This document shows, one piece after another, positions 10,499 to 57,420 of a stretch of 64,000 nt of DNA (its first letter is position 1; every line of letters starts with the position of its first letter). The stretch is from the IMG/VR virus record IMGVR_UViG_3300020186_000013, positions 62,001 through 126,000 of that record; one strand, written 5' to 3'. Both the position numbers and the translations under genes were made by a program. The notes beneath the pieces are model-generated. The model did not search any database, had not been told where the DNA came from, and saw only the letters and a program-made list of their open reading frames with translations.

Positions 10499-10849
10499 CT
10501 ACATCGTCAGGGTCTGCACACGTCCTGTGTCATCCCTATAGTACAGCAAGATCGGAACCGGGCGGTAGCGACGTTTGGCCGTGATGAACGCCACCAAGCC
10601 CGCCCGCGTGGCCTCGGACGCCGCCGCAACGGCCCCGAGCTTCCACAGGAGTTCGTTCAGTTCGCCCTTACCCTCGCCGCAGCTGCCGCAGCCTGTGCCA
10701 CGCAGGGAGCCGTCCAGAGCCCGCTCGTAGACGCCGGCTCCCTCCACAGCCCACGACTCGATTCCAGGGACCTTGTAGAAGTCCGGGAACTTGAGGGCCT
10801 GGAGCAGGGTCAGACGGTCGAAGACGAAGGTCGTACGCGGCCGTCCCAC
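10499..10849 (-). CDS. Small CxxC protein, paralogue of 9693..10016
   Basis: GCGSCGEG motif; C-terminal LLYYRDDTGRVQTLTM. Confidence 0.7.
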   Translation of the reverse strand: MGRPRTTFVFDRLTLLQALKFPDFYKVPGIESWAVEGAGVYERALDGSLRGTGCGSCGEGKGELNELLWKLGAVAAASEATRAGLVAFITAKRRYRPVPILLYYRDDTGRVQTLTM

Positions 10850-12813
10850 GGGAACTCCTTGTTCTTGGGACCATGGGACACGCCACGAGGCGAGTGCCCG
10901 GAACTGTGCACGAACTTCTTCCCCTCGTTGAAATTCTTGATCTTGAACCCGCCCTGCCGAACCATCTCGCCAATAACTATGTCACCACCGTTGTGCCGCA
11001 GTCGCACATCAGGGATGCCGCACCGGCGGATGGCCTCGGTCGCGACGCACCAGAAGCCGCCAGCCACGAAGTCGACGACCGACCCGTTGGGGGCAGGTTG
11101 GTCGACGTGCTTCAGGCGGAAGTTGACGTGCCTGTACCAGTCGCCGCCCCGGAACCACAGGTCGGGGCGGTGGCCGTCCTTGGCGTAGTGGTTGAAGTCG
11201 TGCTGGAACTTCCACCCATACAGTCGCGAGCCGTGGGGGTGGTTGGCCACGATCGTCTCGGTCAGTTTCTCCAGCCACAGGGGGTCGACCACGAAGCTGT
11301 CGTCATCAAACCAGATGACGTGGCTAGTCTCGATCGGCGTCTGCTGGTCCCAGAACATTTCCCGCATCACCGGGTACTTCAGCTTGTTCACGGGGTTGAC
11401 GTAGACCCGCGTGATCGGCTGGTCCCGGACGTACTGAAGGGTCTCAGGGCAGCACTCGTTGCACGCGACCCGTAGGTCGATGCAGTTGGGCGGCACGTAC
11501 CGAAGGATGGAGTCGATGCACCGCTTGGCCAGTTCGGGATGATTGCCGTAACAGAGGACGCACACGGTGAACTTACCGTTGATGATCGGGTGGGACAGAA
11601 GGTTCGGTCGGTGGGGGGCCTTGGCGAAGATCTCAGGAGGCAACATCTTGTTCTGTATCGGCTGCGTCTTTGCCGCCTCGGCCGGCGGGCGGGTGAACTC
11701 CAAGGTGGACTCGGGCTGGCCGTTGACGTACAGCCCGACCTCGTTGCCATGGTCGTCGACCAATGGGTAGTTCGCCGGGACGATCACGGGCAGGCTGTAC
11801 TTGCCGCTGGGCTTTCCGATTGGTGGTAACACGCCATCCTCGTAGTAGGACATCACGGCCTCAACCACATGGTCGACACTGATCATATCAAGGCACAGCG
11901 GCACGGGCATGCTGCCCTGTGGCCGCACAGGTTCAGAGCACAGACGCTTCTGGGCGTTGCCGGGTAGCAGGTCTTCTTTGTCGATCGGCACGGTCAGCCG
12001 CTTCCAGCACCCCTTGTCCTTGCAGCAGTAGATCATGCCCAGGGTGTGCAGATATTTGTGGGGCACCTTCACGGGCGGGCACGCCGGCCCAAAGGCTGTT
12101 GGGTAGTAGTCGTTGACGTACCCCTCCCACCACGGAGCCTCCCGACCGCCACCGAGGACGACGCACGGCTTGTCGAAGCACGCCGCGATGTGCATGGCGG
12201 CGGTCACCCCGCACACCACCCCGTCGGCGTTGGCGATCAGCGAGAGTAGGTCCCTGACGTTCTCGGTCCGGCCCACGGCGTTGAGGGCTCCGGCCAGCGG
12301 AGGGTGGACGTGGTGTTGGTGGGTCGCCCCGGCCTGGACGAACTGGACGCCCTGATGGGCCAGCGTGTCGATGACCTGCTGGTAGCGGTCAACGTGCCAG
12401 TGTTTGGTGGTGATGTCGAGCTTGCCACCCGACAAAATGACCCAATACCGTCCTTTGACGAGAGGCTGCTTCTCGGTCTCGGCCAAGAACAGCTCGCCTT
12501 TGGGGGCCGTGACGGGTACGCGGATGCCGGTCTTCAGCTCGAAGTCGCGATGGAACCACGCCAGGAAGTGAACCTTCTCCCGGTTGTTCGCTTCCTGGAT
12601 GCCGTCCTTGTAGGACAGCTCGATGACCCGTTGGTTCTTGACCGTGAAGTCCAGGGGCACGACGCGGGAGTTGTTCCACCACACCGGCGTCCAGTGTGTG
12701 TCGACCATGAGCCGGTACTGGTTCGGGTACGCCAGCTGGATGTCCCGCACCAGGGCCGTCACGAGGACGGTGTCACCCAGTGCAAACTTGTGTCTTAGAA
12801 TCAGCGTTTGCAC
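10810..12813 (-). CDS. Bifunctional glycosyltransferase: GT9 (heptosyltransferase-like) + GT2 domain
   Basis: ALGDTV, TKHW...YQQVI, LLSLIANADGVVCGVTAAMHIAACFDKPCVVLGG (GT9). C-terminal VCVLCY...RCIDSI...WFDDD (GT-A). Start re-called to GTG at 12813 with SD GGAG. Confidence 0.8.
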   Translation of the reverse strand: MQTLILRHKFALGDTVLVTALVRDIQLAYPNQYRLMVDTHWTPVWWNNSRVVPLDFTVKNQRVIELSYKDGIQEANNREKVHFLAWFHRDFELKTGIRVPVTAPKGELFLAETEKQPLVKGRYWVILSGGKLDITTKHWHVDRYQQVIDTLAHQGVQFVQAGATHQHHVHPPLAGALNAVGRTENVRDLLSLIANADGVVCGVTAAMHIAACFDKPCVVLGGGREAPWWEGYVNDYYPTAFGPACPPVKVPHKYLHTLGMIYCCKDKGCWKRLTVPIDKEDLLPGNAQKRLCSEPVRPQGSMPVPLCLDMISVDHVVEAVMSYYEDGVLPPIGKPSGKYSLPVIVPANYPLVDDHGNEVGLYVNGQPESTLEFTRPPAEAAKTQPIQNKMLPPEIFAKAPHRPNLLSHPIINGKFTVCVLCYGNHPELAKRCIDSILRYVPPNCIDLRVACNECCPETLQYVRDQPITRVYVNPVNKLKYPVMREMFWDQQTPIETSHVIWFDDDSFVVDPLWLEKLTETIVANHPHGSRLYGWKFQHDFNHYAKDGHRPDLWFRGGDWYRHVNFRLKHVDQPAPNGSVVDFVAGGFWCVATEAIRRCGIPDVRLRHNGGDIVIGEMVRQGGFKIKNFNEGKKFVHSSGHSPRGVSHGPKNKEFPWDGRVRPSSSTV

Positions 12814-14317
12814 GCTTCTCCTCCAGTTTGCGTGCCGTCCGGCCTTCCGCCTGCCCCCAGCGGCGGAAGTGCTCGTACCCGCTGCCCACCTCACCCTTCT
12901 GGACACTGTAGAGCACGTCCAGGTGCTTCGTCAGATAGTAGTCTTCGTCGAACTCCTCCTGCGACACGTACCCGGAGACGGTAGGCACCAGGGCCATCGC
13001 CGACAGGTGGTCGCACGTCACGCCCCAGTCGAGCTTGGCGGCGTCCTTGAGTTGCCCGTAGAAGTGGGTGTCGTAGCACTCCTGCTCGGAGAACACGAAG
13101 TTGCGGACGACGCTGCTCCGCAGCAGGACGCAGCCGAAGCCATTGCCCGCCACCTTGACGACGCCCGTGCCGGGGGTCTTGATGATTACGTCCGGGCGGG
13201 ACACCCAGGCAACGAAGCCCTCGCGGTAGCGGTGGGCGTAGGCCCCGGACACGCTGGCGGTCTTCTCGTCCATGGCGTAGAAGAGCCGCAGCAGGGCGTC
13301 GTCCGGGGGGATGACGTCGTCCTCTAGCACCCAGGCGTAGTCCGTCGTCAGGTTGCGGGCGAACAGGTTGTAAATCTTGGCCATCGCCCGGTTGGTGGCC
13401 CGCAGTACGGCTTGATCCATCCGGTCGGCGTCCGCGAGGCCGGGCTCGCCGACTCGCTGGTTGATGTACCGGTAGTCGGCGTAGTCCGACTTCGCCAGCC
13501 AGCTCTGCACGGCGTAGGAGAACCCGCTGCTGTCGCACGTGCTGGTCGTATCGAGGATGACGAGCTTGACCTGGTCGTGGGGCCACGTCTGCCGTTCGAG
13601 GTACGTGCTCAGTTTGGCCCAGCAGTCGAACCGACCGGACATCGGGATGAACAGTGTCACCTTCTCCAGGGACAACGCGGCCCGGCGGAAGAAAGAGTGG
13701 TCGTTTCGCTTGTTCACGAGGCTACTCCCGTGCTTGCGGTAGCGGTACGCAGCCGCCATCTTCACGGCGTCGTACCCGGCCGCGACGATCCGCCGCCACA
13801 GGAGCCAATCCTCGTGGGCGTGGGGGAGTACGGGTATGGAGTACACATCCGCCACGCTGTACGCGATCTTGCGAACGACCGGGCCGCAGTGGATGCAGTT
13901 CTCCCGAGCCAGGTAGTCCGCCGTGGCCGTGTCGGGGAAGGAGGTCACGTCCGACTGATCGCCGAAGTGGGCGAGGTCGGAGTAGACGATGCCGACCTTG
14001 GGGTCGGCGAAGTACGGCAGGGCGTAGTCGATGTACGCCGGGGACAGTTTGTCGTCGGCGTCGACGCAGACGACGAGGTCGCCCCGAGCCGTCTTGATTC
14101 CCGCCAGCCGCGTCGGCAGGGGGTGGTTGTACCTGACCTTCAGGTAGCGGACGGACGGATACCGCGTGACGACCTTGACGGTCTTGTCCGTGGAGTCGTC
14201 GTCGACGACGATGATCTCGTCGGGCGGGCGTATTTGGTGGAAGATGCTGTCAAGGCATTCCCCCAGGTAGTGACCGTAGTTGTGGCACGGAACTACAACG
14301 CTGACGCGATGGCTCAT
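12773..14317 (-). CDS. GT2 glycosyltransferase with a second GT-A-like domain
   Basis: VSVVVPCHNYGHYLGECLDSI, VVDDDSTD, VDADD, HEDW; a second LEDDV motif; C-terminal FDEDYYL...HF...G..EGR motif. Confidence 0.88.
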   Translation of the reverse strand: MSHRVSVVVPCHNYGHYLGECLDSIFHQIRPPDEIIVVDDDSTDKTVKVVTRYPSVRYLKVRYNHPLPTRLAGIKTARGDLVVCVDADDKLSPAYIDYALPYFADPKVGIVYSDLAHFGDQSDVTSFPDTATADYLARENCIHCGPVVRKIAYSVADVYSIPVLPHAHEDWLLWRRIVAAGYDAVKMAAAYRYRKHGSSLVNKRNDHSFFRRAALSLEKVTLFIPMSGRFDCWAKLSTYLERQTWPHDQVKLVILDTTSTCDSSGFSYAVQSWLAKSDYADYRYINQRVGEPGLADADRMDQAVLRATNRAMAKIYNLFARNLTTDYAWVLEDDVIPPDDALLRLFYAMDEKTASVSGAYAHRYREGFVAWVSRPDVIIKTPGTGVVKVAGNGFGCVLLRSSVVRNFVFSEQECYDTHFYGQLKDAAKLDWGVTCDHLSAMALVPTVSGYVSQEEFDEDYYLTKHLDVLYSVQKGEVGSGYEHFRRWGQAEGRTARKLEEKRANADSKTQVCTG

Positions 14318-14320
14318 GGT

Positions 14321-15235
14321 TCACTTCGCTTTAGGCCCGTCATAGTAGAAGTTGTTCTCCGGCACGTCGAACTGGACGCCGCCGATGCTGTGCTTCTCTC
14401 CGAGGAGCTGACGCTCGATCGCCCCGTAGTCGAACGCCTGCTTACCGCGTTTCCGTATGTGCTCGCAATACAGTAACGCCATCGTGCCGCCGCTGACCAG
14501 GGCGAAGTCGTACTGCCCCTCGAACTTGTCGATCGCGGCGTAGACGGCGGGCAGGCGTGACCACTTGGGCACCTCCCACCGCTTGGGCGTGTCGACGAAG
14601 CCGACGACCGTGTACCCCTTCTCGATGCCGCACCGGCGGTGCCGCTCCTGGAACGCCGGGTCGGCCAGCACCCGAGACACCTTCTCCGACATCCCGCCGA
14701 CGACCAGGACCCGCTTGCCGTCGAAGCACGGGAAGAAGTTGCCGTGCGTGTTCATGCTGTAGCAGGCGTTGACGTCGATCTTCGGCTTGCCGAGGTCGGT
14801 CAGGTTGAACCCCATCCGCTTGAAGATCTGGGCCTGGGCCATCTCGACCGGGACCCACCAGTACATGAGCAGGTAGACCGGCGAGTTGGCCATCGCCTCG
14901 CGGATGTTGTGCCGCAGGATGTAAGAGTCCTCGACCGTCGACCCGGCACACCGTAGGGCATGGACGACCAGGTGGGGGTTCAGGTCGGGCACGTCGAGCA
15001 ACGCCTCGGGGCAAGCGGGGATGATGTCCGAGTCGCCAAGGCTGACGACGGACGCCGGGGCGTCCCCGGTGAAGAGTTCTCGGATCTTGGCGGTGGCCTC
15101 GGTGCCCCGCAGGAAGTTGGCCCGCCACGCGAACAGGTCGCTGTCCGGCGGCGGCGTCCACTGCTGGGCGATCAGGTCGTGCCATGCCTTCGGAATGTTT
15201 TTAACGCACCACTGAAGGTTCTCGTACACGGTCAT
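14321..15235 (-). CDS. GT-D-fold-like glycosyltransferase
   Basis: SVVSLGDSD, GKRVLVVG, DFALVSGG...CEHI...GKQAFDYG. Confidence 0.55.
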   Translation of the reverse strand: MTVYENLQWCVKNIPKAWHDLIAQQWTPPPDSDLFAWRANFLRGTEATAKIRELFTGDAPASVVSLGDSDIIPACPEALLDVPDLNPHLVVHALRCAGSTVEDSYILRHNIREAMANSPVYLLMYWWVPVEMAQAQIFKRMGFNLTDLGKPKIDVNACYSMNTHGNFFPCFDGKRVLVVGGMSEKVSRVLADPAFQERHRRCGIEKGYTVVGFVDTPKRWEVPKWSRLPAVYAAIDKFEGQYDFALVSGGTMALLYCEHIRKRGKQAFDYGAIERQLLGEKHSIGGVQFDVPENNFYYDGPKAK

Positions 15236-28452: not shown

Positions 28453-30015
28453 TTACAGGCACTGCCCGCTGTGGTATCGTGCCCGCACGCTCTCACGGAT
28501 GAGGGTGTAGGGCAGCGACTCTTGGTACGCCGTGCCGGTGAATGTTTTGACGGACTCGGTGAACCCCGGTCGCAAGTCATCCCCTGGTGCGTCCAGTGTA
28601 ACCGGGTCGTCTTGAAAAACCAATTCCACCAGCACGACGCAGCACTGCCCAGGGGGCACGAGGCGGCGGGCCAAGGTCGCGACCGACATGCCCAACGCAC
28701 CGGGACCGAACGACGCGGTCCGCAGCTTAACGACAAACAGGTTGTCGCGGAAGAGGTTACTCGTCAGGAAGCCCAGCGGGTTGACGGTCGCGGGCAGGGC
28801 CATCGCGGTCGGCTGACTGGTCCGAGCGGACGCCGGCCGCTGGTCCAGGAGCATCGCCAACGTCTGCCCGGAGGCCACGCCGTTTCGGTGCACGTCGGCC
28901 CAGAAGGCTTCAGCGTCGGCCGGCACGCCACCCACCTCGAACGATACCTTGGTGTACCCGTCGACGTCCTCTTCGACGACCAGGGGTACTACTTTGTTCT
29001 CAAACACGAGGTCTTGGAAGTACCCGGACCCGAGCAGTCCCTCGCCGACCGCGAGTGCCCGCAGGTCGGGGGGCAGCTGGCCTCGGTTGAACTCGAACAC
29101 CGTCAAGGCGTCCGACAGGCTGTCGCCCTTGCGGATGGTGTCGCCCACGGCGGGAACGATCGTCGACCGGGGGTTGAATCGGTAAACGAACTTGTCGGTG
29201 ATGACGAGGGTTGTGTTCGGCTCGTAAACAATGTCCTCAACGACCTCGGTGCCGTGGGCCAAATCCACGCCCGCCACGGTCGCGAACAGGCGGTCGAGAG
29301 ACAACGACGAGCCGCCGTCGATCAGGCCATCAAAGACGGCGTTAATCAGTTCCCGGTAGCCCTCGGACGAGGACAGGTGGACGCCGAGGGCGTAACCGAA
29401 CTGCTCGTACACGGTATTGAGGTCGAGTTCGCCCCGGTAGATCCACAGCCCAGCCTGACGGTCAATGACTTTGTTGTCCTTGAGCAGCGTCCGGATCGGG
29501 GTCAGCGGGTCGGCGAACGGGTCGTCGCGGAACGTGAGACTTGTTTTCCCGTTGTTGGCATTTTTCTCAAGCAGGAAATCAACCCCGTTTAAGAAAGTCA
29601 GGCTGGGGTCGGTGATGCGGTTGGTGATCGCCGGCACATCGACCAGCTGCGGGTCCACGTTCCAACTGAACATCGACCCGGCGACAGGGATGCCGTATTC
29701 GAGGTCGCCCGGCTGGTAGGCGTGGGTGCCGATGTACCTCGCCAGATTGGCGTCCGATAGATTCCTCTGCGACTCCAGCAGCTCTAGAAAGTACCAGTTC
29801 TCCTTGCGGAATACGGGGACCGTGTACCGACTCACGGAGGCCAGTAGGTCGAGGGTGTTGAGGTAGAGTTGGGCGTCGAGCTGGCCGCGAGCGTAGAGGT
29901 AGCTTTGGACGGGGAACGACCCCTGGTAGACGTTCTCCCAGAACGTCCCGACCAGAGCGAGCAACGCCTCTGGCTTGTCCAGTTGGTTCGTCGGATAGGT
30001 GTAGGGCTGCGTCAT
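28453..30015 (-). CDS. Putative baseplate wedge protein (gp7/P2 I-like position)
   Basis: 520 aa; FGYALG...YRELINAVF...GSSL; follows the J-like gene once the cargo cassette is removed. Confidence 0.55.
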   Translation of the reverse strand: MTQPYTYPTNQLDKPEALLALVGTFWENVYQGSFPVQSYLYARGQLDAQLYLNTLDLLASVSRYTVPVFRKENWYFLELLESQRNLSDANLARYIGTHAYQPGDLEYGIPVAGSMFSWNVDPQLVDVPAITNRITDPSLTFLNGVDFLLEKNANNGKTSLTFRDDPFADPLTPIRTLLKDNKVIDRQAGLWIYRGELDLNTVYEQFGYALGVHLSSSEGYRELINAVFDGLIDGGSSLSLDRLFATVAGVDLAHGTEVVEDIVYEPNTTLVITDKFVYRFNPRSTIVPAVGDTIRKGDSLSDALTVFEFNRGQLPPDLRALAVGEGLLGSGYFQDLVFENKVVPLVVEEDVDGYTKVSFEVGGVPADAEAFWADVHRNGVASGQTLAMLLDQRPASARTSQPTAMALPATVNPLGFLTSNLFRDNLFVVKLRTASFGPGALGMSVATLARRLVPPGQCCVVLVELVFQDDPVTLDAPGDDLRPGFTESVKTFTGTAYQESLPYTLIRESVRARYHSGQCL

Positions 30016-30018
30016 GGT

Positions 30019-30034
30019 TAGAAGCCAGTTTCTA
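30019..30034 (-). repeat. Dispersed 16-bp quasi-palindrome, copy 4 (TAGAAACTGGCTTCTA)
   Basis: Ends 3 bp upstream of the ATG at 30015; identical to copies 5 and 6. Confidence 0.9.
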
Positions 30035-30040
30035 ACGAAT

Positions 30041-30070
30041 GAGGGGTCAGCCCGTCAGAGCTGACCCCTC
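30041..30070 (-). terminator. Hairpin closing the cargo cassette
   Basis: 11-bp stem GAGGGGTCAGC/GCTGACCCCTC followed by ATTCGTT (weak U tract). Confidence 0.5.
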
Positions 30071-30100
30071 GTTGCGGGCAGGGTACGCAAGGTCACCGAA

Positions 30101-30796
30101 TCAGTGGCACTGGGCGATGTACTGCCGTTGCGGTGCCGTCACGATGTACTGCGGGGCCTGCACGTATCTAACGTACTGCGGGGCCTGCACGACCTGCTGC
30201 ACCTGCGGCGGGCAAGGATCGACAACGGACAACGGAGTGGCGTCAGGGGCCTTCACCGGAGCCGGTGCGACCATTGGAGCCGGTGCTACCATTGGGGCTG
30301 GCTGGACAACTGGAGCCGCCTGCACGACCTGCACCGGTTGCACGTACTGGTACGCCGGCACCTGAATCACTTGCTGCGGAGCGTACTGAATGTTCTGAAC
30401 GGTGTTGTACGGCGTGTAGCTGTACGTGTTCAGCTGGTTCAGTTGCAGGCGTTGACCAACCAGGAGTTGCTGCTGCTGCACGTGCTGCACCTGCACGACC
30501 TGTTGGACGTGCTGCACCTGCACCTGCTGGATCTGCTGCACGTGCTGCACCCGCACCTGCTGCACGTGCACCGGGGCAACGAGCAGACGCTGCCGGGGGA
30601 CAATCACCCGCTGAGGAGCGACGATCACCCGCTGGGGGGCGACCACGATCCGCTGTGGAGCGATGAAGCCGCCGCCGACCTGCACGATATTGGTCCGACG
30701 GCCGAGGAGGCCACGGTTGTTGACGACAGTGACCTGGCCGAAGGCGTCGGTGACGAGGCAGAGAAGGGCCAGAGTGGCCAAAGCGAGAGTCCGCAT
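30101..30796 (-). CDS. Secreted Gln/Val-rich low-complexity protein
   Basis: Start re-called to MRTLALATLALLCLVTDAFG (signal peptide, SD AAGGAGG). Contains APQR and QHVQQ repeats. Confidence 0.75.
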   Translation of the reverse strand: MRTLALATLALLCLVTDAFGQVTVVNNRGLLGRRTNIVQVGGGFIAPQRIVVAPQRVIVAPQRVIVPRQRLLVAPVHVQQVRVQHVQQIQQVQVQHVQQVVQVQHVQQQQLLVGQRLQLNQLNTYSYTPYNTVQNIQYAPQQVIQVPAYQYVQPVQVVQAAPVVQPAPMVAPAPMVAPAPVKAPDATPLSVVDPCPPQVQQVVQAPQYVRYVQAPQYIVTAPQRQYIAQCH

Positions 30797-30867
30797 AACT
30801 AACCTCCTTGTAACTGCGATTACCATCCAGACACACATGCCTGCCGGTAGGTTCCAGAGACCGTATT

Positions 30868-31566
30868 CTACGGCGAAACGGTCCACTTCAGCAAGGCCGG
30901 CAGGTATTCCTGTTTCAGGGCCTTGCTGCCGTCATTGACGGCCTCGGGCGGCATGACGCCGGTCGACGCCTGCCCGTAGATCATCCACTTCCGCTCTTTG
31001 CCGTGTTTGGCGAGGGCGTAGTTGCCGTTCTGTTCGTACAGGAGCCGCAGGTTGCCCTTGGTCCCCATGGAGCCGCCGTGGCACTTGTAGCACGTCCCCA
31101 CGAACGCGGCGATCACTTGGGGGTCGCCCTTGTCGTCGATACCAAGGTCAGTCCGGACTCCCGACTGGGTCACAGGCGGTTGGATCATAGGAGCGGGGGC
31201 CACGGCAGGGGGCGGCGTATATGTTGCCCCCGGAGCGACGGGCTGCCCCTGGGTGGCCAAATAGTTGCGAAGTTCTTCGCGGATCACGTCGCGGATCGCG
31301 GCCCGCTGCTGGTAGGCGTCGTGGACCGAGTAGTAGTGTGTCGCCCCGTACGCCTGAATTGGGACAGCGTAGCTGACAACGGGGACGGTCACGACCAGGG
31401 GAGCGACGACCACCTCTTGGGCGACGACCTTTTGGACCGGGGCAGTGTAGTAGTTGTACCCGCTCGACTGATACGTCGGCTGGTAGTACGTCTGGCAGCG
31501 GATTTGAGCCTTCGCCTCGGCCGCGACGAGCAGCAGTGCGACGGCCGCGATTGCGGTGCGGAACAT
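30868..31566 (-). CDS. Secreted protein with a planctomycete-type cytochrome c domain
   Basis: Signal peptide MFRTAIAAVALLLVAAEAKA; CYKCHG...KGNLRL...MPP...L..W. Confidence 0.7.
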   Translation of the reverse strand: MFRTAIAAVALLLVAAEAKAQIRCQTYYQPTYQSSGYNYYTAPVQKVVAQEVVVAPLVVTVPVVSYAVPIQAYGATHYYSVHDAYQQRAAIRDVIREELRNYLATQGQPVAPGATYTPPPAVAPAPMIQPPVTQSGVRTDLGIDDKGDPQVIAAFVGTCYKCHGGSMGTKGNLRLLYEQNGNYALAKHGKERKWMIYGQASTGVMPPEAVNDGSKALKQEYLPALLKWTVSP

Positions 31567-31618
31567 GTGGACTCCTTCCCATATGTGCGTGCGGACACGC
31601 GGGTTGCATTATCCCTGG

Positions 31619-33388
31619 TCACGGGGCTACGGACAAGGGCGGTAGCCCTCGCAGCTCGCGGTCCGCCTGGACGGCCTTGCGGTACTCCATCAAAAGGAGG
31701 AACGCCTCCTGGTATCCGCCCCTCTCCCACGTCGTGCGGGGGATCGGCTTGCCGTCGAGGATCAATCGACCGATGCGGCCCTTGGTCGACAGCGATATAG
31801 CGTCGGCAAACTCTTGGGGATTGCTGCCGCACTCACGGGCGGCTTGCTCCAGGCTCAGTGGGGCGATGTACCACAGGCGGTGTTTCTTGAACTGCTCGGC
31901 GTTCTCGTCACCCGACAGCCCGTTGCACTCTTTGATGAAGTCCTTGTAGGCTTCCTGGTCGTTCCGCACCAGCCGCTGGATGTTCGATAGGTAGAAGGAC
32001 TGGATCTGTTGCTTGGTTTGAATGTTGGCGTTCAGCTTGACACCACTGCGAAGGATCGCACTTACCTCGTTCTTGGGGGTGATGATGCCCTCGACGTGGC
32101 ACGCCACGCAGCTCTTCCATGTTAGCACGATACCCTTCTCGCCCGATATCGTGTCGTGTACGACGCGAGGGTCGCCGAACTCCACACGCTGGTTCTCGCC
32201 GTTGGTGAGCAGGTAGTATTGGGCACCCTTCATGTCCTGGAAGATGATCTCGGCCGCATCGAACTTCGTCGGGGGTACGGGTAGGGTCTCCAGGAAGTCC
32301 TGGTCCCCGGCGGTGCGGAATACGTCGTACGTCTGCCACAGCACGCCCCCTGGCCCCTGAATGCGTCGCAGTACGCGGTTCTGGTACGACACGTAGCTCT
32401 CGCCCTGGTCGACGACAACACCGCGATCCGCGTACCGTTTACGAGCCTGCTTTTCGTCCACGCCCCAGAACTTGAAGAACTCGTCCGTCGTCTTCGGGAC
32501 TGTCCCGGCAATCTTCTGCTTGACGGTCTTCTTGGTCTTCTGAACGACCTTCCGGGTGGCGTACTCTTTCTCCATGTACTTGTGGCCCTTCGGAAACACG
32601 GTCCCCTTGAGATCGGGACCACCAGGCCAGATCTTCTCCACCATCCGCCCGGTTTCGTACGCCTCATCGGTCGAAGTCTCGACCTCAGTCTCGACCTCCT
32701 TCTCGGCCGTGCTGTACGAATACAGGAGCTGGTAGTAGAAGGCGTTGTCAGCTTGAGTCGCGGCCGACGCCAGGAATTGGGTGGTGTCGCCAACGTAGTA
32801 GACGAACCAGTCGGACCGGACGACGCCGTTGCCGATCATGCTTTTCGTGTATGCCAAACCTCGGCTGTCCGACGGGATCAAGGGCTCGCGGAAGTAAGGG
32901 TCCTCGGCCGAGATCTTCTCGAACACTTCGGGCGTCCAGCAGTACCACCGCAGGTCGATCCAGTAGAGGCGGTTGTCCGTATTCGGGACTACGCGGGGTC
33001 GCTCGACGACTGGCCCGGCCGAGGCCGAGTTGCAAGTGAAGAGGAGGGACGCAGTGGCTTCAGGGAGGCGATTACGCGGCACGCCCGACAGGTCGAAGAA
33101 TCGCAGGTAGGCGACCTCCTCCGTTGCCTTCTTCTCTGCTGTTCGCAGATCAGATCCACCGGCGAGGAAGTCGGCTGTGAAATACTTGTGCATGACCGAT
33201 ACGTGCTCGGCCACCCGTTCCACGACATACGCGGGACTCCACGCGGGCAATTCGGGGTTGAGCTTCAATCGGAGTTTTTCCCATCCCGCGTCCGGTGGTT
33301 CCAATACGTCCGACTGGCCTCCCGCCGGCAGGATTGCCAGCAGGAGGCCGAGCAGGACGGCCGGAATCAGTGCGACCCGTGGGGTCAT
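31619..33388 (-). CDS. Secreted protein with a single CxxCH haem-binding motif
   Basis: Signal peptide; NRV..R...G..WQTYD...AAEIIF...YLL...SCVACH, a pattern recalled from planctomycete exported proteins. Confidence 0.6.
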   Translation of the reverse strand: MTPRVALIPAVLLGLLLAILPAGGQSDVLEPPDAGWEKLRLKLNPELPAWSPAYVVERVAEHVSVMHKYFTADFLAGGSDLRTAEKKATEEVAYLRFFDLSGVPRNRLPEATASLLFTCNSASAGPVVERPRVVPNTDNRLYWIDLRWYCWTPEVFEKISAEDPYFREPLIPSDSRGLAYTKSMIGNGVVRSDWFVYYVGDTTQFLASAATQADNAFYYQLLYSYSTAEKEVETEVETSTDEAYETGRMVEKIWPGGPDLKGTVFPKGHKYMEKEYATRKVVQKTKKTVKQKIAGTVPKTTDEFFKFWGVDEKQARKRYADRGVVVDQGESYVSYQNRVLRRIQGPGGVLWQTYDVFRTAGDQDFLETLPVPPTKFDAAEIIFQDMKGAQYYLLTNGENQRVEFGDPRVVHDTISGEKGIVLTWKSCVACHVEGIITPKNEVSAILRSGVKLNANIQTKQQIQSFYLSNIQRLVRNDQEAYKDFIKECNGLSGDENAEQFKKHRLWYIAPLSLEQAARECGSNPQEFADAISLSTKGRIGRLILDGKPIPRTTWERGGYQEAFLLLMEYRKAVQADRELRGLPPLSVAP

Positions 33389-33399
33389 GGCTCACTCCG

Positions 33400-34383
33400 T
33401 CAGGCAATCTTCTTACCGTCGAGGAAGATCCCCGTGGCCCCCTCAATGAGGAGGAACGACTTGTTGCCGGGGGTTGACGGCGTAGTCGGACCCGGCGGCA
33501 CGGGAACCGTCGGAGGTACGGGAGTCGGCGGCGGTACGTTGTCGGGCGGGCCGTACCGGGCTTGGATACGGGGTACGTCGTCGTTGCCTTGGGGGCCGCT
33601 GATGTTGACGTTGTAGTACGGGGCCATGAGGGCCGAGCCGACCTTGCTGTGGTCGAGGCCGAGCAAGTGGCCGAACTCGTGACAAGCGACGTTCATCATC
33701 AGAATGCCCCGTTGGTTGGGGTCCGTGATCCACGTCTCGTCCACGTCGAACCGCATCTGCAACTGCTGGTCGCTGCCGTCGGGCAAGTACGCCCAAGCCA
33801 GGACGCCGCCGGAGCCATCGAAGTTCGATTTCTGCCCCTGGCCAGTACCGATTAAGATGTCGCACGACTCGCCCGACCGGGCCTTCTCGATGTTCAGCTT
33901 GGCGACCCGCATCCAGCGGTTGAACGCCTCTTGGAGGATCGCGTCCTGCTCGATCTTGCCGAGGCCACTGACGTAATCCGTGATGCAATACTTGATCGAC
34001 GTCTTCCGCCACCGGGGCAGGTTCAGCTCGGCGAACTGCTTCATCTTCATGTACTGGGCACCGCTGGCCGTGTCCGGCTGCACCAGGTCGGGGCACCCGC
34101 ACCGTTGCAGCTCCATCGCCCGGACGGTCTTGGCGTCGATCTGCCCGCTCTCCTTCAGGCCGAAGAACTTCTGGAACGCCGAGACAGCGTTGACGATGTC
34201 CCCCAGGCTGATGTCCGTCCAGCCGGACAGTTCCTTGCCGAGGTAGCCGAAGGCGTCGAGGTAATTGAGGGCGAACCGGGCCTCTGGTTTGGCCGATCGC
34301 GAGTCGTTGATTCGGTTGAAGTCGGTCAGGGCTTGCACGGCGTGCTCGACGTGCCCGCTGCTCGGATCTGTGCTCGAATTCAT
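33400..34383 (-). CDS. Matrixin (M10/MMP-like) zinc metalloprotease with a peptidoglycan-binding-like prodomain
   Basis: YLDAFGYL...AFQKFFGL...G.ID..T; cysteine switch RCGCPD; FDGSGGVLAWA; HEFGHLLGLDHS; Met-turn ALMAP. Confidence 0.9.
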   Translation of the reverse strand: MNSSTDPSSGHVEHAVQALTDFNRINDSRSAKPEARFALNYLDAFGYLGKELSGWTDISLGDIVNAVSAFQKFFGLKESGQIDAKTVRAMELQRCGCPDLVQPDTASGAQYMKMKQFAELNLPRWRKTSIKYCITDYVSGLGKIEQDAILQEAFNRWMRVAKLNIEKARSGESCDILIGTGQGQKSNFDGSGGVLAWAYLPDGSDQQLQMRFDVDETWITDPNQRGILMMNVACHEFGHLLGLDHSKVGSALMAPYYNVNISGPQGNDDVPRIQARYGPPDNVPPPTPVPPTVPVPPGPTTPSTPGNKSFLLIEGATGIFLDGKKIA

Positions 34384-34401
34384 TGCCGTCCTCCTTGACA
34401 G

Positions 34402-36054
34402 TTACACGTTCGTGGGCACCGCCGAGACTACCGCAATCCCGACGTCGGCGGCGTCCAAGAAGAACTGCACCGTCCGTGGTGTCACCATGTTCGCCGGAGA
34501 GTTCGGGACCTGGAGGGTCTCGTCACTCCGGATGTATTTGATCGAGTTGTTAGGGTATCTGATGCGGCCGAACATGTCGATAGCACCGGTGCTCATGCCG
34601 TCCGACAGGTAGGGGGCGATGACGGCTTGGAGCGTGCTGGCACTGACGGTGCCTGTGAACCCGGTAGTGTTGACGGTGTGGACCAGGGCGTTGGCAATCG
34701 CCGCGACGTCCGGGTCGGCTGACAAGTTCCGCTTGACGATCTTGAACGACAGCTGGACGAAACACGGCACCGGGGCCTTGACCAAAACGTCAGTACCGCG
34801 ACTGCGGACCTCGGGCATGTTGATCGTGTCCTGGATGTCGCCAATGAGGGGTAAGCACCGGACTTCGAGGGTGTACAGGTTCGTTGCCCCCGGTAGCAGG
34901 CCAGTCGTCGGCGTGACGGTATCGGTGAACTGGATCACGGCCGTCTGGTAGCGGGTGTACGCCCCCTCGGCCAAGGTGCGGATGTCGGGGACGAATCCGG
35001 TCAACCCGGTGAAGTCGAGGGCACGGGCGTCTGAGTTGATCGTGAACCCGCCGATGACGTTCTCGGCGTCAGCCCGGCGGATGTTGGCGACCTCGTAGAA
35101 GCCTGGGGCGTCGTCGCGGCTTACGTTGAACTGCCATAGGCCGCTACCATCATTGTTGACCCGCACCAAGCTGGCCGTCTTCGAGAGGGCCAAGTGGAAC
35201 AGGTCGTCCTGGGACCGGATGTACCAGTCGGCCCGCCCGCCGTAACTGACGGGGAAGATGGTGTGCCGATCCCGGTGCATCTCAGGGTCGCCGTAGCCGA
35301 TGACGGATGTCACGGGCACCGCACTGTACGCCGTGATCGACCGCAGGAAGGCGTTCATGTTGACGCGGTTCGACAGGGTCTTGGCGGCGATGCCCTGCTG
35401 GAGACGGTTGATCAGTTCCTGGTTGGTCTCGGTGTTTCGCCCCTCGGTGAAGTCACTGACCACATAACTGCGGAGGTAGTGCGACGGCAGCTGAGTCGGA
35501 ACGATCGGCGTGTCCTTCTTGAGCAGCCCGGCCGACCCGACGGCCTGGGCGAACACGGTGATCGTGAACACGTAGGTGCCGTCCTGGAGCAGCGTCAGGA
35601 GTCGGTCGCTTGCGTCGTTGATCTGGGCCGGGTCGTTCTTCGCCGCGTACACCTGGTCGGTCTGGAAGATCTGCCCGTCGGCCTCGAAGGTGGTGCCCAG
35701 GGACAGCGTGACGATCGTGTTCGTTGACAGGACGATGGCGACCTCACCCTGGGCGACCGTCCCGGCGTACCGGAACAAGCCGAAGTTCGACAGCACGCCG
35801 TCGACCGTGTCTGGGTCGGCCAGGGTCGGATCGGCCTGGATGTCGATGAGGCTGCGGGCCGACAGGTAATCTTTGACGTTGGCGTCGAGCTGGGCTTCGA
35901 GGACCGCATGGTAGTAAGCGAGGAGGTTGTGCAGCACCCCGAACCGAAGGTCCAAGGTCGGGTTGTCCTCCTGCACCCGTGCCGTGACCTCGGACAGGTT
36001 CTGAGCCACGACGGCCGCGTCCAGGGTCGTCAGGTCTCGGAGTGCAATCGTCAT
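34402..36054 (-). CDS. Baseplate J/gp6-like protein
   Basis: DLRFGVLHNLL, AQGEV, GTTF, AQAVGSAG, GRNTETNQELINR, GGRADWY. Confidence 0.75.
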   Translation of the reverse strand: MTIALRDLTTLDAAVVAQNLSEVTARVQEDNPTLDLRFGVLHNLLAYYHAVLEAQLDANVKDYLSARSLIDIQADPTLADPDTVDGVLSNFGLFRYAGTVAQGEVAIVLSTNTIVTLSLGTTFEADGQIFQTDQVYAAKNDPAQINDASDRLLTLLQDGTYVFTITVFAQAVGSAGLLKKDTPIVPTQLPSHYLRSYVVSDFTEGRNTETNQELINRLQQGIAAKTLSNRVNMNAFLRSITAYSAVPVTSVIGYGDPEMHRDRHTIFPVSYGGRADWYIRSQDDLFHLALSKTASLVRVNNDGSGLWQFNVSRDDAPGFYEVANIRRADAENVIGGFTINSDARALDFTGLTGFVPDIRTLAEGAYTRYQTAVIQFTDTVTPTTGLLPGATNLYTLEVRCLPLIGDIQDTINMPEVRSRGTDVLVKAPVPCFVQLSFKIVKRNLSADPDVAAIANALVHTVNTTGFTGTVSASTLQAVIAPYLSDGMSTGAIDMFGRIRYPNNSIKYIRSDETLQVPNSPANMVTPRTVQFFLDAADVGIAVVSAVPTNV

Positions 36055-54324: not shown

Positions 54325-55275
54325 TTATGGTTCGGGGAAGTTCGGCCCGTACGACGAGTAGCCCTCGTCGGGCGTGTGGGCTGGGTCAGGGAAGTCGATG
54401 CCGGCGTCGGGCAGTTGCCCGAGGTGGGCCAGCTGGTCGGGTATCTTGATGTCGTAGACCACGGACGAGTACGCGATGGGCCTCATCTCGACGTTGCCGA
54501 TGAGCGGGCACCCCCGGATCTCACTGACGTGGTCGATCTTGTGGATGTAATACCGGTCGTCGGTCCTCTTGTTGACCCAGATGTCGTCCTCACCCATCAG
54601 GTCAGTAAGCAGCATGCGGGCCTGAACGACGATGTCATTGACGGTTGCTCGGGTCTCGCCGTCGATGTGAATGCGACGGCTCTTGGGGCTCAGGTCGGCC
54701 CAGGTACAAGCCATCGGGTAGAAGTACCCACACAGGAAGCCGGTGCCGTAGCAATACTCGCAGTTGGCGTCCGTGACCTCCTGCGTCTGGTAGTCGAGGC
54801 AGTGCGTGCACCGGACACCCGTGACACGACGTTTGAGCAGGTAACCGTCCTGCCCCGCCCCGATGCGGAACCGGAGCTTCTCCTTGCGGATAATCTCGCG
54901 GGCATTCCGCCAGTCGCGACGGTCGAGAGTGCCGATAGCCGCGACCGGCTGCGACACGTAGGTGCCCTTGGAGCTGGTGACCAGGACCCGGTAGTACGTC
55001 CAGTTGGTCTTACCGAAGACTCGCTTCTCGGGGTCGATGGCGTAGAAGGCGTTCTCGATGGGTCCGCCCACGTTGGCCCAGTCGTCGGCGTCCTGATTGG
55101 CGGACTGGCCGACCTGGAGTTGGAAGACGAGTGGGTTGGGGTCCGTGAAGGTGTCGAGCAATTCCCACATGATGCGGGTGCCGCCCCGGATGAGGTAGCT
55201 CACCACGACCCGGTCGAAAACGGGTTCACACTGGTTGGGGCAGAGGCGGCACCGGTGGAAGTGTGAGTTGGCCAT
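54325..55275 (-). CDS. Putative neck/head-closure protein with zinc-finger motifs
   Basis: Start re-called to MANSHF because a terminator lies just upstream. Contains RCTHC...CEYCYGTGF. Confidence 0.55.
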   Translation of the reverse strand: MANSHFHRCRLCPNQCEPVFDRVVVSYLIRGGTRIMWELLDTFTDPNPLVFQLQVGQSANQDADDWANVGGPIENAFYAIDPEKRVFGKTNWTYYRVLVTSSKGTYVSQPVAAIGTLDRRDWRNAREIIRKEKLRFRIGAGQDGYLLKRRVTGVRCTHCLDYQTQEVTDANCEYCYGTGFLCGYFYPMACTWADLSPKSRRIHIDGETRATVNDIVVQARMLLTDLMGEDDIWVNKRTDDRYYIHKIDHVSEIRGCPLIGNVEMRPIAYSSVVYDIKIPDQLAHLGQLPDAGIDFPDPAHTPDEGYSSYGPNFPEP

Positions 55276-55296
55276 CCGTGGCCCCCGCTGATAGGT

Positions 55297-55331
55297 AAAA
55301 AAAGGCGTTCCTTCATGATGAAGGATACGCC
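55297..55331 (-). terminator. Intrinsic terminator
   Basis: GGCGTATCCTTCA-TCA-TGAAGGAACGCC followed by T7. Confidence 0.8.
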
Positions 55332-55342
55332 CAAAGCAAAAC

Positions 55343-55543
55343 TCAATCAACCCGCGTGGCCCGCTCTCCTGTCGAGTGGGCCACCCTGGCTGCTGTACGA
55401 TTGATCGGGCGACTACGATGTGTCGCCGCCCGCCGACCGAACCCGCCCCTCTGGTAACCCATCGCATATGGGTTATCCTCGAACATTGCCACCTCTTGCT
55501 TGGGTGTGAGTTGTTCACCGTGGTTGTTCTTCTTTGCGGACAT
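55343..55543 (-). CDS. Small basic hypothetical protein
   Basis: 66 aa, SD AAGGAG, ends just before the terminator. Confidence 0.55.
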   Translation of the reverse strand: MSAKKNNHGEQLTPKQEVAMFEDNPYAMGYQRGGFGRRAATHRSRPINRTAARVAHSTGERATRVD

Positions 55544-55670
55544 GGAAGACTCCTTCCGCCCATGTAGGACGGTGGGTAAAGAAACACCCCGACCGAATTG
55601 GCCGGGATCAGTACCGAATCGGCACTTCTCCGCACCCCGGTGCCGTCACCGGGGCAGGAAGAAAAGTCGA

Positions 55671-56006
55671 TCAGGATCGCGAGTACACCTCGTCCTCGGG
55701 GAACCGTTCACGGACCTCTTCCTCGTCGTCGCCCGTGTCGACTACATCGACACACGGGTCAGCCTTCTTCGGCGTCTCCGTGACACGGGCATCCCGTGTC
55801 AGGAGATAAACTGTCACTACCGCACTCGCAAAGAGTGCGATCCACGGGAGGGCCTCCAGCACCATCTCGGACTTTTTTTCCGTGGCCCGCTTCTCAACGA
55901 GATAGCGGGTCCACTGCACCGTCCGAACCACCAACATGAACCCGAACGAGACCGCGAACGCAATCACGAACGCGGGGGCGAACGACGCCCAGAAGCCATC
56001 GAACAT
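55671..56006 (-). CDS. Two-TM membrane protein with an acidic tail
   Basis: Two hydrophobic segments; SD AGGAG. Confidence 0.7.
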   Translation of the reverse strand: MFDGFWASFAPAFVIAFAVSFGFMLVVRTVQWTRYLVEKRATEKKSEMVLEALPWIALFASAVVTVYLLTRDARVTETPKKADPCVDVVDTGDDEEEVRERFPEDEVYSRS

Positions 56007-56070
56007 AATGCTCTCCTGTTATTCCCCGCCCAATGGGCGAGGAGGGATGGGAAAAAAAGACACCGCGACC

Positions 56071-56376: not shown

Positions 56377-56438
56377 AGGAACACCCTCAAAGAACCACAC
56401 CCTAGTGCTCGCCAACCAAAGTGGTCGACGTCTAGGGT

Positions 56439-57399: not shown

Positions 57400-57420
57400 G
57401 TGCTGTCCTCCCTGATGGGT

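What the first reader, a model, noticed from the sequence alone, without database searches (positions are those of the whole stretch)
30101..34383. Secreted cargo cassette (MMP-like protease, two c-type cytochrome-like proteins, Q/V-rich protein) inserted in the baseplate operon
Seen: four co-oriented genes interrupt the baseplate J gene and the next wedge gene. Three have signal peptides, two have CxxCH, and the protease has an intact HExxHxxGxxH, Met-turn and cysteine switch. The cassette ends in a hairpin followed by palindrome copy 4. Exported haem-c proteins would need host Sec and cytochrome c maturation, which is unusual phage cargo, and late co-expression is implied. Inference: a periplasmic or surface module for envelope remodelling, non-canonical lysis of a protein-rich planctomycete envelope, or redox support for folding the Cys-rich fibres.
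Basis: partly seen in the sequence, partly recalled or inferred. Interest (0 to 1): 0.7.

Follow-up and report, generated by a model that had tools for sequence, protein, structure and literature searches.

The report
Phage protease plus exported cytochrome cassette
A giant bacteriophage from microbial mats carries, inside its tail-baseplate operon, a portable four-gene unit (a latent collagenase-like zinc protease followed by three exported proteins, two of them haem-c cytochrome-like) that recurs in many uncultured phages and whose job, probably acting on the host cell envelope late in infection, is still unknown.

Summary
Four co-oriented minus-strand genes (33400-34383, 31619-33388, 30868-31566, 30101-30796) lie between a Baseplate_J gene and the next conserved baseplate gene. 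They end in a strong hairpin plus a 20-nt palindrome. The genome is a 208-kb jumbo phage from microbial-mat metagenomes.

Gene 1 is a full pro-MMP-like matrixin with no signal peptide. Genes 2-4 have Sec-like N-termini. CxxCH is invariant in 52 homologues of gene 2 and 16 of gene 3; gene 3 also keeps an invariant Met-Pro.

Contigs from other runs bridge both junctions, so this is not a chimera.

The slot between J and the wedge gene is a hotspot. A baseplate-J tree puts all cassette carriers in one supported clade, consistent with one old gain. One lineage swapped the cytochrome trio for other genes. A complete relative lacks the whole cassette, so it is accessory.

The order protease, 590-aa haem protein, small cytochrome, low-complexity protein also occurs in unrelated contexts in other phages (GC 38-67%). 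A 595-kb phage has a papain-like ORF in the protease position.

Gene 2 belongs to a family with no Pfam model and about 3100 representative clusters.

Best guess (about 0.35): a late, periplasm-acting envelope proteolysis module. A planctomycete host is not shown.

The parts
34402..36054 (-). Baseplate J-like gene (550 aa). It is the upstream flank, not part of the cassette.
   Evidence: Pfam PF04865 E 1e-8 (35 bits, cut-off 21). PHROG 6 baseplate wedge subunit E 8e-14. 37-53% identical in 20+ related phage contigs.
33400..34383 (-). Gene 1: pro-MMP-like zinc metalloprotease (327 aa). It has a PG_binding_1-type prodomain with cysteine switch RCGCPD, a matrixin catalytic domain (HEFGHLLGLDH, Met-turn ALMAPYY), a Pro-rich linker and a short C-terminal beta-hairpin-like tail. 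It has no signal peptide.
   Evidence: Peptidase_M10 E 2e-33 and PG_binding_1 E 2e-7. It aligns to pro-MMP-10 residues 16-270, E 2e-33. In 9 phage homologues R94, C95, D99, H235, E236, H239, H245 and M253 are invariant. Maximum hydropathy is 1.06. AAGGAGG lies 7 nt before the ATG.
31619..33388 (-). Gene 2: exported 589-aa mono-CxxCH protein, called 'Cx589' here. It has a signal-peptide-like N-terminus, a helical N-domain, a long variable beta-hairpin, a beta-rich domain carrying CVACH (427-431) and a helical C-domain.
   Evidence: No Pfam or PHROG hit. 38 close homologues. About 3100 representative clusters at E<=1e-3. C427, C430 and H431 are invariant in 26 and in 52 sequences, together with R338, D355, E380, Y507 and R551. 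AlphaFold models have pLDDT 77 (whole protein) and 94 (C-terminal half). The fold matches AFDB and ESM clusters named 'cytochrome c domain-containing', which carry PSCyt1 hits.
30868..31566 (-). Gene 3: exported 232-aa protein. It has a signal peptide, a Tyr/Gln-rich stretch, a conserved hydrophobic segment plus helix, a Pro-rich linker and a C-terminal PSCyt1-like mono-haem cytochrome c domain (CYKCH ... GVMPP).
   Evidence: PSCyt1 E 9e-4, 20.2 bits, just under the cut-off of 22; 22.3 bits in the six-frame search. 7 of 16 family members hit PSCyt1, and others hit Cytochrome_CBB3 or Cytochrom_C. C159, C162, H163, M205 and P206 are invariant in 16 sequences. Residues 145-232 match PSCyt1 domains by predicted structure.
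30101..30796 (-). Gene 4: exported 231-aa low-complexity Q/V/P-rich repeat protein. It has APQRVIV and VQHVQQ repeats, the motif LNQLNTYSY and a Cys next to the C-terminus.
   Evidence: Translation. Positional counterparts in L001, L003, L053 and L079 share a signal peptide, Q/V/N/R-rich repeats, LNxLNTYxY and a near-C-terminal Cys. There is a weak tblastn hit in L006. There is no family hit, and the ESM model is disordered.
30041..30070 (-). GC-rich 13-bp hairpin, terminator-like, directly after gene 4.
   Evidence: MFE -37.6 kcal/mol for the 96-nt spacer, z -4.2, and 0 of 200 shuffles fold as well.
30017..30036 (.). 20-nt palindrome GTTAGAAGCCAGTTTCTAAC, ending one base before the ATG of the next baseplate gene. 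It belongs to a genome-wide family with core TAGAAnnnnnnTTCTA.
   Evidence: 1 exact match, 0 expected; 6 copies of the core in the 208-kb genome, most beside GC hairpins.
28453..30015 (-). Downstream flank: conserved 520-aa baseplate-module protein. In relatives without the cassette it directly follows J.
   Evidence: No Pfam or PHROG hit. 30-47% identical and syntenic in all relatives; adjacent to J in L009, L013, L019, L020, L022-24, L026 and L027.

Best explanation
The four genes form one portable, accessory functional unit of jumbo phages. In this lineage it was captured long ago into the gap between the baseplate J gene and the next baseplate gene, and it is expressed with the late tail genes.

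Proposed working (inferred):
1. Genes 2-4 are exported by the host Sec system.
2. The two CxxCH proteins receive haem from the host cytochrome-c maturation system. All three accumulate in the periplasm or envelope late in infection.
3. The MMP-like protease is made as a latent zymogen in the cytoplasm, held shut by its invariant cysteine-switch prodomain.
4. It acts on envelope proteins only when it reaches the envelope compartment, for example through holin lesions at the end of infection.
5. The result is help in breaching or remodelling a protein-containing envelope layer at exit. The haem proteins would act as partners, perhaps as redox triggers of the thiol-zinc switch.

Shown: gene content, motif conservation, export-type N-termini, portability and accessory status.
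Inferred: compartment, timing, substrate, and any redox link between the cytochromes and the protease.
For: 1. The protease and Cx589 are adjacent, in that order, in 10 independent loci covering at least four genomic contexts.
- J|wedge slot: window, L001, L003, L006/L007, L008, L053.
- After glycosyl- and methyltransferases: L054.
- Among dUTPase and acetyltransferase genes in a 38% GC contig: L079.
- Near an HNH gene: L070.
- L078.
This argues that the protease works together with an exported protein.

2. The full order protease, Cx589, small CxxCH..MP cytochrome, secreted low-complexity protein is kept in L079 and L053. In the 595-kb phage LR756511.1 the trio follows a papain-like ORF instead (Peptidase_C1 E 0.003, 18 bits, below the 20.7 cut-off). 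A protease of another class in the same position suggests that proteolysis is the constant theme.

3. In sister phages the same slot holds M10, small membrane or secreted ORFs and a second peptidase (phrog_16701, E 1e-5). In L054 a two-TM holin-like ORF precedes M10.

4. The cysteine switch, zinc site and Met-turn are invariant across 30-60% identical homologues. M10 is the best conserved protein of the module, at 54-60% identity in L001, L003 and L006 against 42-51% for baseplate proteins.

5. Six-frame searches of the 93%-complete genome found no SLT, phage lysozyme, Amidase_2, M15_4 or GH108, and only sub-threshold M23 hits. The only PG_binding_1 domain is in M10.

6. Tight spacing, a strong RBS and a terminator-like hairpin after gene 4 place the cassette in the late baseplate transcription unit.
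Against: - No experiment or transcript data exist; no RNA run was listed.
- The window cassette has no holin or spanin.
- Matrixins are not known to cut peptidoglycan. PG_binding_1 is simply the standard MMP prodomain.
- Complete relatives (G001, G002) lack both M10 and Cx589, so these phages can get out of cells without them. The module is at most an auxiliary exit factor.
- The absence of canonical endolysin families is weak evidence in a genome where most proteins have no family hit. GH108 did not ring in any control genome, so that search is uninformative.
- A papain-like partner would not be activated by oxidation, which weakens the specific redox-trigger idea.
- Export was judged from hydropathy only.
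- The complex prediction for M10 with Cx589 gave no answer.
Confidence: 0.35

Rival explanations
1. Receptor destruction or superinfection exclusion. The late-made protease and exported partners modify or strip surface and envelope proteins of the infected cell. Progeny are then not lost on debris, and competing phages cannot adsorb. This would resemble receptor-blocking proteins encoded next to receptor-binding genes in other phages (own knowledge).
For: The cassette is accessory and patchily distributed, like exclusion and moron genes. In this clade it sits in the tail and host-recognition module. It consists of a protease plus exported proteins.
Against: The protease has no export signal. 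In other phages the unit is not near tail genes. Nothing explains the need for two haem proteins.
Confidence: 0.15
2. Auxiliary redox metabolism. The two cytochromes boost or rewire periplasmic electron transport, or bind and detoxify NO or other small ligands in mat hosts during infection. The protease and the low-complexity protein would be unrelated neighbours or processing factors.
For: Gene 3 has the His/Met signature of soluble class-I cytochromes (invariant CxxCH and MP; PSCyt1 and CBB3 hits). Cx589 has no invariant distal Met or His. Its haem domain weakly resembles five-coordinate cytochrome c'-beta and P460: Z 5.4, 4.8, 4.0, 3.9 and 3.8, five of the top twelve hits. The source is microbial mats, which are redox-stratified.
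Against: The Z scores are below the tool's reliability bar of 8, and Foldseek found nothing significant. Strict linkage to a protease in at least four contexts is unexplained. Placement in a late structural operon is unusual for metabolic genes (own knowledge).
Confidence: 0.15
3. Virion-associated entry enzyme. The protease is mounted on the baseplate through its Pro-rich linker and C-terminal beta-hairpin tail. It digests a protein surface layer during adsorption. The exported trio would be a separate function.
For: In this clade the protease gene directly follows Baseplate J. It has no signal peptide. The linker and short C-terminal tail are conserved in type B and C cassettes. Latency through a cysteine switch would protect the assembling virion.
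Against: The same protease-Cx589 pair occurs away from any tail gene. Relatives with the same baseplate lack it. G003 and G005 carry M10 genes elsewhere in the genome. No PHROG structural family is hit.
Confidence: 0.1

Closest known systems
Matrix metalloproteinases (MEROPS M10A matrixins, e.g. pro-MMP-3/-10) and the bacterial matrixin karilysin
   Same: Prodomain of PG_binding_1 type with an RCGxPD cysteine switch. Catalytic HExxHxxGxxH and Met-turn. Alignment over both domains to pro-MMP-10, -1 and -3 (E 1e-31 to 1e-33) and to the karilysin catalytic domain (E 6e-23).
   Different: No signal peptide. In the pro-MMP-10 alignment, the positions I take from memory of MMP structures to be the four structural-zinc ligands read Q, Q, W and R, and the W is invariant in the phage family. 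No hemopexin domain; instead a Pro-rich linker and a roughly 20-aa tail. It is encoded by a phage and always followed by an exported haem protein gene.
PSCyt1 'planctomycete cytochrome c' domain proteins (Pfam PF07635) and class-I c-type cytochromes
   Same: Gene 3 has CxxCH followed about 40 residues later by an invariant Met-Pro, with marginal PSCyt1 scores. The bacterial fold relatives of Cx589 carry PSCyt1 or Cytochrom_C hits at the same motif.
   Different: Both are phage-encoded. Gene 3 has a long non-cytochrome N-terminal half. Cx589 is a roughly 560-aa multi-domain protein with no Pfam model and no conserved distal ligand. Haem binding is untested.
Cytochrome c'-beta / cytochrome P460 (beta-sheet mono-haem c proteins)
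   Same: Beta-rich domain with CxxCH near its C-terminal end and no conserved sixth ligand. These are the repeated top structural hits to residues ~297-476.
   Different: Z is only 3.8-5.4, identity is 10-15%, and Foldseek is not significant. The domain is embedded in a much larger protein. Treat this as a lead only.
Phage lysis cassettes (holin, endolysin, spanin) and auxiliary exit enzymes such as mycobacteriophage LysB
   Same: Late-expressed and envelope-directed. A hydrolase without a signal peptide is combined with exported or membrane proteins. It is accessory and swappable. Sister cassettes contain small TM proteins.
   Different: No recognised peptidoglycan hydrolase fold, no holin and no lipobox spanin in the window cassette. 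The enzyme is a protease. Two partners are cytochrome-like, which no described lysis system has (own knowledge; no paper found).

Membership tests
Peptidase M10 (matrixin) | Pfam PF00413 above gathering score | tested here: met
   115.8 bits against a cut-off of 24, E 2e-33.
Peptidase M10 (matrixin) | Zinc motif HExxHxxGxxH plus Met-turn | tested here: met
   HEFGHLLGLDH at 235-245 and ALMAPYY (M253). H235, E236, H239, H245 and M253 are invariant in 9 homologues.
Peptidase M10 (matrixin) | Prodomain with cysteine switch PRCGxPD | tested here: met
   QRCGCPD aligns with PRCGVPD of pro-MMP-10. R94, C95 and D99 are invariant.
Peptidase M10 (matrixin) | Structural zinc site (His, Asp, His, His) of animal MMPs | tested here: not met
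   In the pro-MMP-10 alignment the corresponding positions read Q, Q, W and R. Which residues are the ligands comes from my own knowledge of MMP structures.
Peptidase M10 (matrixin) | Secretion signal | tested here: not met
   No hydrophobic N-terminus; maximum 19-residue hydropathy is 1.06. SignalP was not available.
c-type cytochrome, PSCyt1 / class I (gene 3) | CxxCH conserved, with a distal Met | tested here: met
   C159, C162, H163, M205 and P206 are invariant in 16 sequences.
c-type cytochrome, PSCyt1 / class I (gene 3) | Pfam PF07635 above gathering score | tested here: inconclusive
   20.2 bits against 22 in hmmscan and 22.3 bits in the six-frame search. 7 of 16 homologues hit PSCyt1 at E<=0.01.
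c-type cytochrome (genes 2 and 3) | Covalent haem attachment after export | not testable with these tools
   N-termini are Sec-like by hydropathy. The phage has no Cytochrom_C_asm gene. Haem staining is needed.
c-type cytochrome (gene 2, Cx589) | Conserved CxxCH within a fold shared with annotated cytochrome c domain proteins | tested here: met
   CxxCH is invariant in 52 sequences. AFDB hits have E 1e-23 to 1e-15 and TM up to 0.62 by query and 0.79 by hit. ESM atlas hits have TM 0.61-0.67 over about 430 residues.
Cytochrome P460 / c'-beta | Beta-sheet haem domain fold | tested here: inconclusive
   VIA-align Z 5.4 (8brk), 4.8 (6hiu), 4.0 (7s5o), 3.9 (2je3) and 3.8 (6amg) on a pLDDT-94 model. 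These are below the reliability bar, and Foldseek gave E>0.4.
Canonical phage lysis cassette | Peptidoglycan hydrolase, holin and spanin genes together | tested here: not met
   No PG-hydrolase family is hit by gene 1 apart from the MMP-type prodomain. The window cassette has no TM-only ORF and no lipobox. PHROGs gave no lysis hits for sister cassettes.
Baseplate J (flanking gene) | Pfam PF04865 above gathering score | tested here: met
   35.2 bits against 21.1; PHROG 6 E 8e-14.

The most novel reading that the evidence does not exclude
The unit is a previously unrecognised kind of phage exit or envelope-breaching system. Phage-encoded periplasmic haem-c proteins (one with an open, ligand- or oxidant-reactive haem) would control a phage-encoded MMP-like zymogen by acting on its thiol-zinc cysteine switch. 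Envelope proteolysis would then fire only when the cytoplasmic protease meets the periplasmic cytochromes. The roughly 3100-cluster Cx589 family would be the signature of this system across uncultured phages.
Probability: 0.12. Interest if true: 0.85.

Novelty: new variant of a known kind. Interest (0 to 1): 0.62.

Why it matters
Exported c-type cytochromes are very unusual phage genes. I found no paper describing them paired with a protease. No record in a 50,697-genome phage collection matches the protease, and only one uncultured 595-kb phage matches the large haem protein.

The unit is nevertheless conserved, mobile and widespread in metagenomic phages. The large haem protein defines a family of thousands of sequence clusters with no Pfam model.

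Working out its role would assign function to a large block of viral dark matter. It could reveal how phages deal with protein-rich or otherwise unusual cell envelopes. It would also give a natural example of a bacterial-virus MMP-type zymogen with an intact cysteine switch.

The work also shows a clear insertion hotspot inside a baseplate operon. That hotspot is a useful marker when mining accessory genes in jumbo phages.

Tried and rejected
- Complex prediction of Cx589 (26-589) with the protease: score 0.00, no answer either way.
- Apparent natural fusion of M10 and Cx589 in L078 (818-aa called gene). Rejected: the HExxHxxGxxH motif lies in another reading frame, so the long ORF comes from a frameshift or a spurious high-GC ORF.
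- PDB fold searches of the whole Cx589 model and of its C-terminal half by Foldseek: nothing significant.
- Profile search of PDB sequences: only chance-level hits.
- Search for Cx589 relatives in 185,579 species genomes: none, so no prophage or host clue.
- The M10 profile in those genomes found seven loci. Three are contigs of this phage clade binned into MAGs (L067-L069). One is an M10-Cx pair in a Planctomycetaceae-labelled MAG contig with an HNH gene and otherwise no family hits, so it may be cellular or phage (L070). Three weaker matches were not examined (L071-L073).
- The weak M23 hits in the genome fall in two >1000-aa ORFs that PHROGs assigns to RNA polymerase beta subunit families. 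They are not lysins.
- A crude longest-ORF gene caller failed on the 69% GC relative G001. It was replaced by tblastn.
- The first J tree contained a wrong-frame L009 sequence and was redone.
- RNA runs: none was listed.
- Literature searches for phage PSCyt1, phage matrixins or phage cytochromes found nothing relevant.
- An eCIS-type (non-phage) contractile injection system was considered because of the AAA ATPase at 3500-5185. I set it aside because the record encodes a DNA polymerase, a helicase and multisubunit RNA polymerase subunits, and CheckV rates it a 93% complete virus.

Full report
WHAT THE WINDOW IS. The window is bases 62001-126000 of a single 208,145-bp virus record. The record is linear and CheckV rates it 93% complete. 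It encodes a DNA polymerase, a helicase, an SbcC-like nuclease and two large proteins that hit phage RNA polymerase beta subunit families. It also carries a long minus-strand structural block that includes a Baseplate_J gene. It is therefore a jumbo phage. Nine 2018 microbial-mat metagenome runs contain the region. Most of its proteins have no Pfam or PHROG hit. Neither the J protein nor the protease matches any of 50,697 deposited phage genomes.

OBSERVATION.
- Gene 1 (33400-34383) is a complete pro-matrixin. It has a PG_binding_1-type prodomain with QRCGCPD, HEFGHLLGLDH and a Met-turn. It aligns to pro-MMP-10, -1 and -3 across both domains at E about 1e-33. It has no hydrophobic N-terminus.
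- In the pro-MMP-10 alignment, the positions I take to be the four structural-zinc ligands of animal MMPs are replaced by Q, Q, W and R (the identity of the ligands is from my own knowledge).
- Genes 2, 3 and 4 have signal-peptide-like N-termini, judged from the sequences and hydropathy only.
- Genes 2 and 3 each contain one CxxCH.
- Gene 4 most likely starts at the ATG at 30796.
- The cassette ends with a 13-bp GC hairpin (30041-30070) and a 20-nt palindrome (30017-30036) that abuts the next gene's ATG. The spacer folds far better than shuffles (z -4.2). The palindrome core recurs six times in the genome, mostly beside hairpins.

(a) CxxCH conservation. The 589-aa protein ('Cx589') has 38 close homologues. 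C427, C430 and H431 are invariant in 26 full-length sequences. They remain invariant in 52 sequences down to 30% identity, together with R338, D355, E380, Y507 and R551. In the 232-aa family, C159, C162, H163, M205 and P206 are invariant in 16 sequences. That is the classical His/Met class-I signature. 7 of 16 members hit PSCyt1.
(b) Chimera. A 44.6-kb contig from one run spans the whole region, and that run may be the sample the window was assembled from. Shorter contigs from two runs not flagged as the source bridge both junctions: 29989-30622 and 29300-30508 across the lower junction, and 34181-35200 across the upper. No alternative joints were seen. A 100% identical IMG/VR contig and a 92% identical relative also exist.
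Both tests pass.

WHAT CX589 IS. It has no Pfam model, and none of 52 relatives hits one. A profile search of 1.84 billion representatives finds 3132 clusters at E<=1e-3 and 465 at E<=1e-30. AlphaFold gives a confident model: pLDDT 77 for the whole protein and 93.6 for residues 290-589. Foldseek finds no solved relative. It does find AlphaFold DB clusters named 'cytochrome c domain-containing protein' at E 1e-23 to 1e-15, one of them fused to a Ser/Thr kinase. ESM-atlas clusters share the fold over about 430 residues. Some are viral. Others come from Planctomycetota, Myxococcota and Pseudomonadota and carry PSCyt1 or Cytochrom_C hits. An exhaustive structural alignment repeatedly ranks cytochrome c'-beta and cytochrome P460 at the top for the beta-rich haem domain (Z 3.8-5.4). 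That is below the tool's reliability bar. Together with the absence of any invariant distal Met or His, it is only a lead towards an open, five-coordinate haem.

INSERTED OR NATIVE?
- Five related loci (J proteins 40-51% identical) have exactly the same order: J, M10, Cx589, small cytochrome, low-complexity protein, 520-aa gene. They are L001, L003, L006/7, L008 and L053.
- A J-protein profile retrieved 39 IMG/VR loci. In nine of them J is followed directly by the 520-aa gene.
- In five (L012, L014-16, L018) the slot holds M10 followed by six or seven different small membrane or secreted ORFs, including a second peptidase, and no CxxCH.
- Two further loci hold other contents.
- Two 100%-complete relatives lack M10 and Cx589 anywhere in the genome. 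Two others have an M10 gene elsewhere.
- Collinear comparison with the complete relative G001 shows the four genes as a clean indel between conserved neighbours.
- A maximum-likelihood J tree places all carriers of an M10-led cassette, plus the cassette-less L009/G001, in one supported clade (98/96). Outgroups are mostly empty. The root is by midpoint only.
- The simplest history is one old acquisition at this junction, long vertical retention, replacement of the trio in one sublineage, and at least one loss.
So 'inserted cargo' is right, with the qualification that the insertion is ancient and the slot is a hotspot.

A PORTABLE UNIT. More distant Cx589 relatives are again directly preceded by an M10 gene, but in unrelated contexts:
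- after glycosyl- and methyltransferases, with a two-TM ORF upstream (L054);
- among dUTPase, acetyltransferase and fatty-acid hydroxylase genes in a 38% GC contig, followed by a 250-aa CISCH...GYMP protein and two secreted low-complexity proteins (L079);
- beside an HNH gene (L070).
In the 595-kb uncultured phage LR756511.1 the trio (612 aa with CIVCH; 246 aa with CAQCH...GRMPP; 211-aa secreted repeat protein) follows a papain-like ORF instead of M10. An ENA contig shows Cx589, a small cytochrome and a 234-aa ORF. The constant theme is a protease without a signal peptide, a large exported mono-haem protein, a small exported cytochrome and an exported low-complexity protein.

HOW IT MOST LIKELY WORKS. 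Linkage of a cytoplasm-made, switch-latent protease to three exported proteins argues that the protease acts where they are, in the envelope of the producing cell. In this phage it is made together with late tail genes. Sister cassettes rich in peptidases and small membrane proteins point the same way, as does the failure to find any canonical endolysin family in this genome. My best reading is an auxiliary exit or envelope-remodelling function. I give this about 0.35, for these reasons:
- complete relatives manage without the module;
- matrixins are not known peptidoglycan hydrolases;
- the window cassette has no holin or spanin;
- nothing has been measured.
Rivals are receptor destruction or superinfection exclusion (0.15), auxiliary periplasmic redox or NO chemistry (0.15), and a baseplate-mounted entry protease (0.10). 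The remaining probability is 'something else'.

HOST. The planctomycete host is not established. PSCyt1-type motifs and fold relatives are commonest in Planctomycetota but also occur in Myxococcota, Verrucomicrobiota and Pseudomonadota. Clade members range from 38 to 72% GC. Their MAG bins carry three different phylum labels, and at least one looks like a mis-binning: a 43% GC contig in a Gemmataceae bin, a family I recall as high-GC.

NOVELTY. Each domain type is known. The combination, its presence in phages, its mobility and the size of the uncharacterised Cx589 family are not described in anything I could find. I class it as a new variant of a known kind (a phage accessory envelope-acting cassette). 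There is a modest chance (about 0.12) that it is a new redox-gated proteolytic exit system.

Noticed in passing
window 1190, 30019, 39814, 49875; genome 11293 and 158897: A 16-nt palindrome core, TAGAA-N6-TTCTA, occurs six times in the 208-kb genome. It usually lies right next to a GC-rich hairpin at gene ends, in either order relative to the hairpin. As the phage encodes its own multisubunit RNA polymerase, it could be a phage-specific promoter, terminator or operator signal.
   Followed up: partly
window 10810-15235 (-): A cluster of glycosyltransferase genes (GT9-like, GT2, GT-D fold) lies just downstream of the tail and fibre genes. The GT9-like gene is conserved in relatives L001 and G001. 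This may indicate virion or host-surface glycosylation.
   Followed up: no
window 3500-5185 (-): A 561-aa classical AAA ATPase (PF00004, E 2e-26) lies beyond the structural block. It is conserved at 29% identity in relative G001. It recalls the ATPases of contractile injection systems, but here it sits in a bona fide phage genome.
   Followed up: partly
window 58895-59833 (-): A 312-aa protein with no family hit is 85% identical to its counterpart in relative G001. The rest of the shared proteins are 24-63% identical. This is unusually strong conservation or a recent exchange.
   Followed up: no
L075 (genome 134565-138422 and 142656-145772): Two proteins of more than 1000 aa hit phage multisubunit RNA polymerase beta-subunit PHROGs. 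They also explain the spurious weak Peptidase_M23 hits.
   Followed up: partly
L004 (LR756511.1 481678-486247): A 595-kb low-GC uncultured phage carries the same exported trio. It comprises a large CxxCH protein, a small CxxCH..MPP protein and an A/P/V- and N/V/G-repeat secreted protein with curli-like repeats. It is preceded by a papain-like ORF rather than a metalloprotease.
   Followed up: partly
L078 5001-7457: A called 818-aa 'M10-Cx589 fusion' is not real. The M10 zinc motif is in a different frame from the M10 N-terminus, so this copy of the protease is frameshifted (a pseudogene or an assembly error).
   Followed up: yes
L067, L068, L069: Contigs of this phage clade sit in metagenome-assembled genomes labelled Gemmataceae, Ca. 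Nanopelagicales and Nannocystaceae. The 43% GC of the 'Gemmataceae' contig suggests mis-binning. The 72% GC Nannocystaceae contig might reflect a real myxobacterial host.
   Followed up: no
L051 (G005 55040-58507): In a relative without the baseplate cassette, an M10 gene elsewhere in the genome is followed by a secreted trypsin-like serine protease with a Cys/Pro-rich tail. This is another pairing of a protease with exported partners.
   Followed up: no
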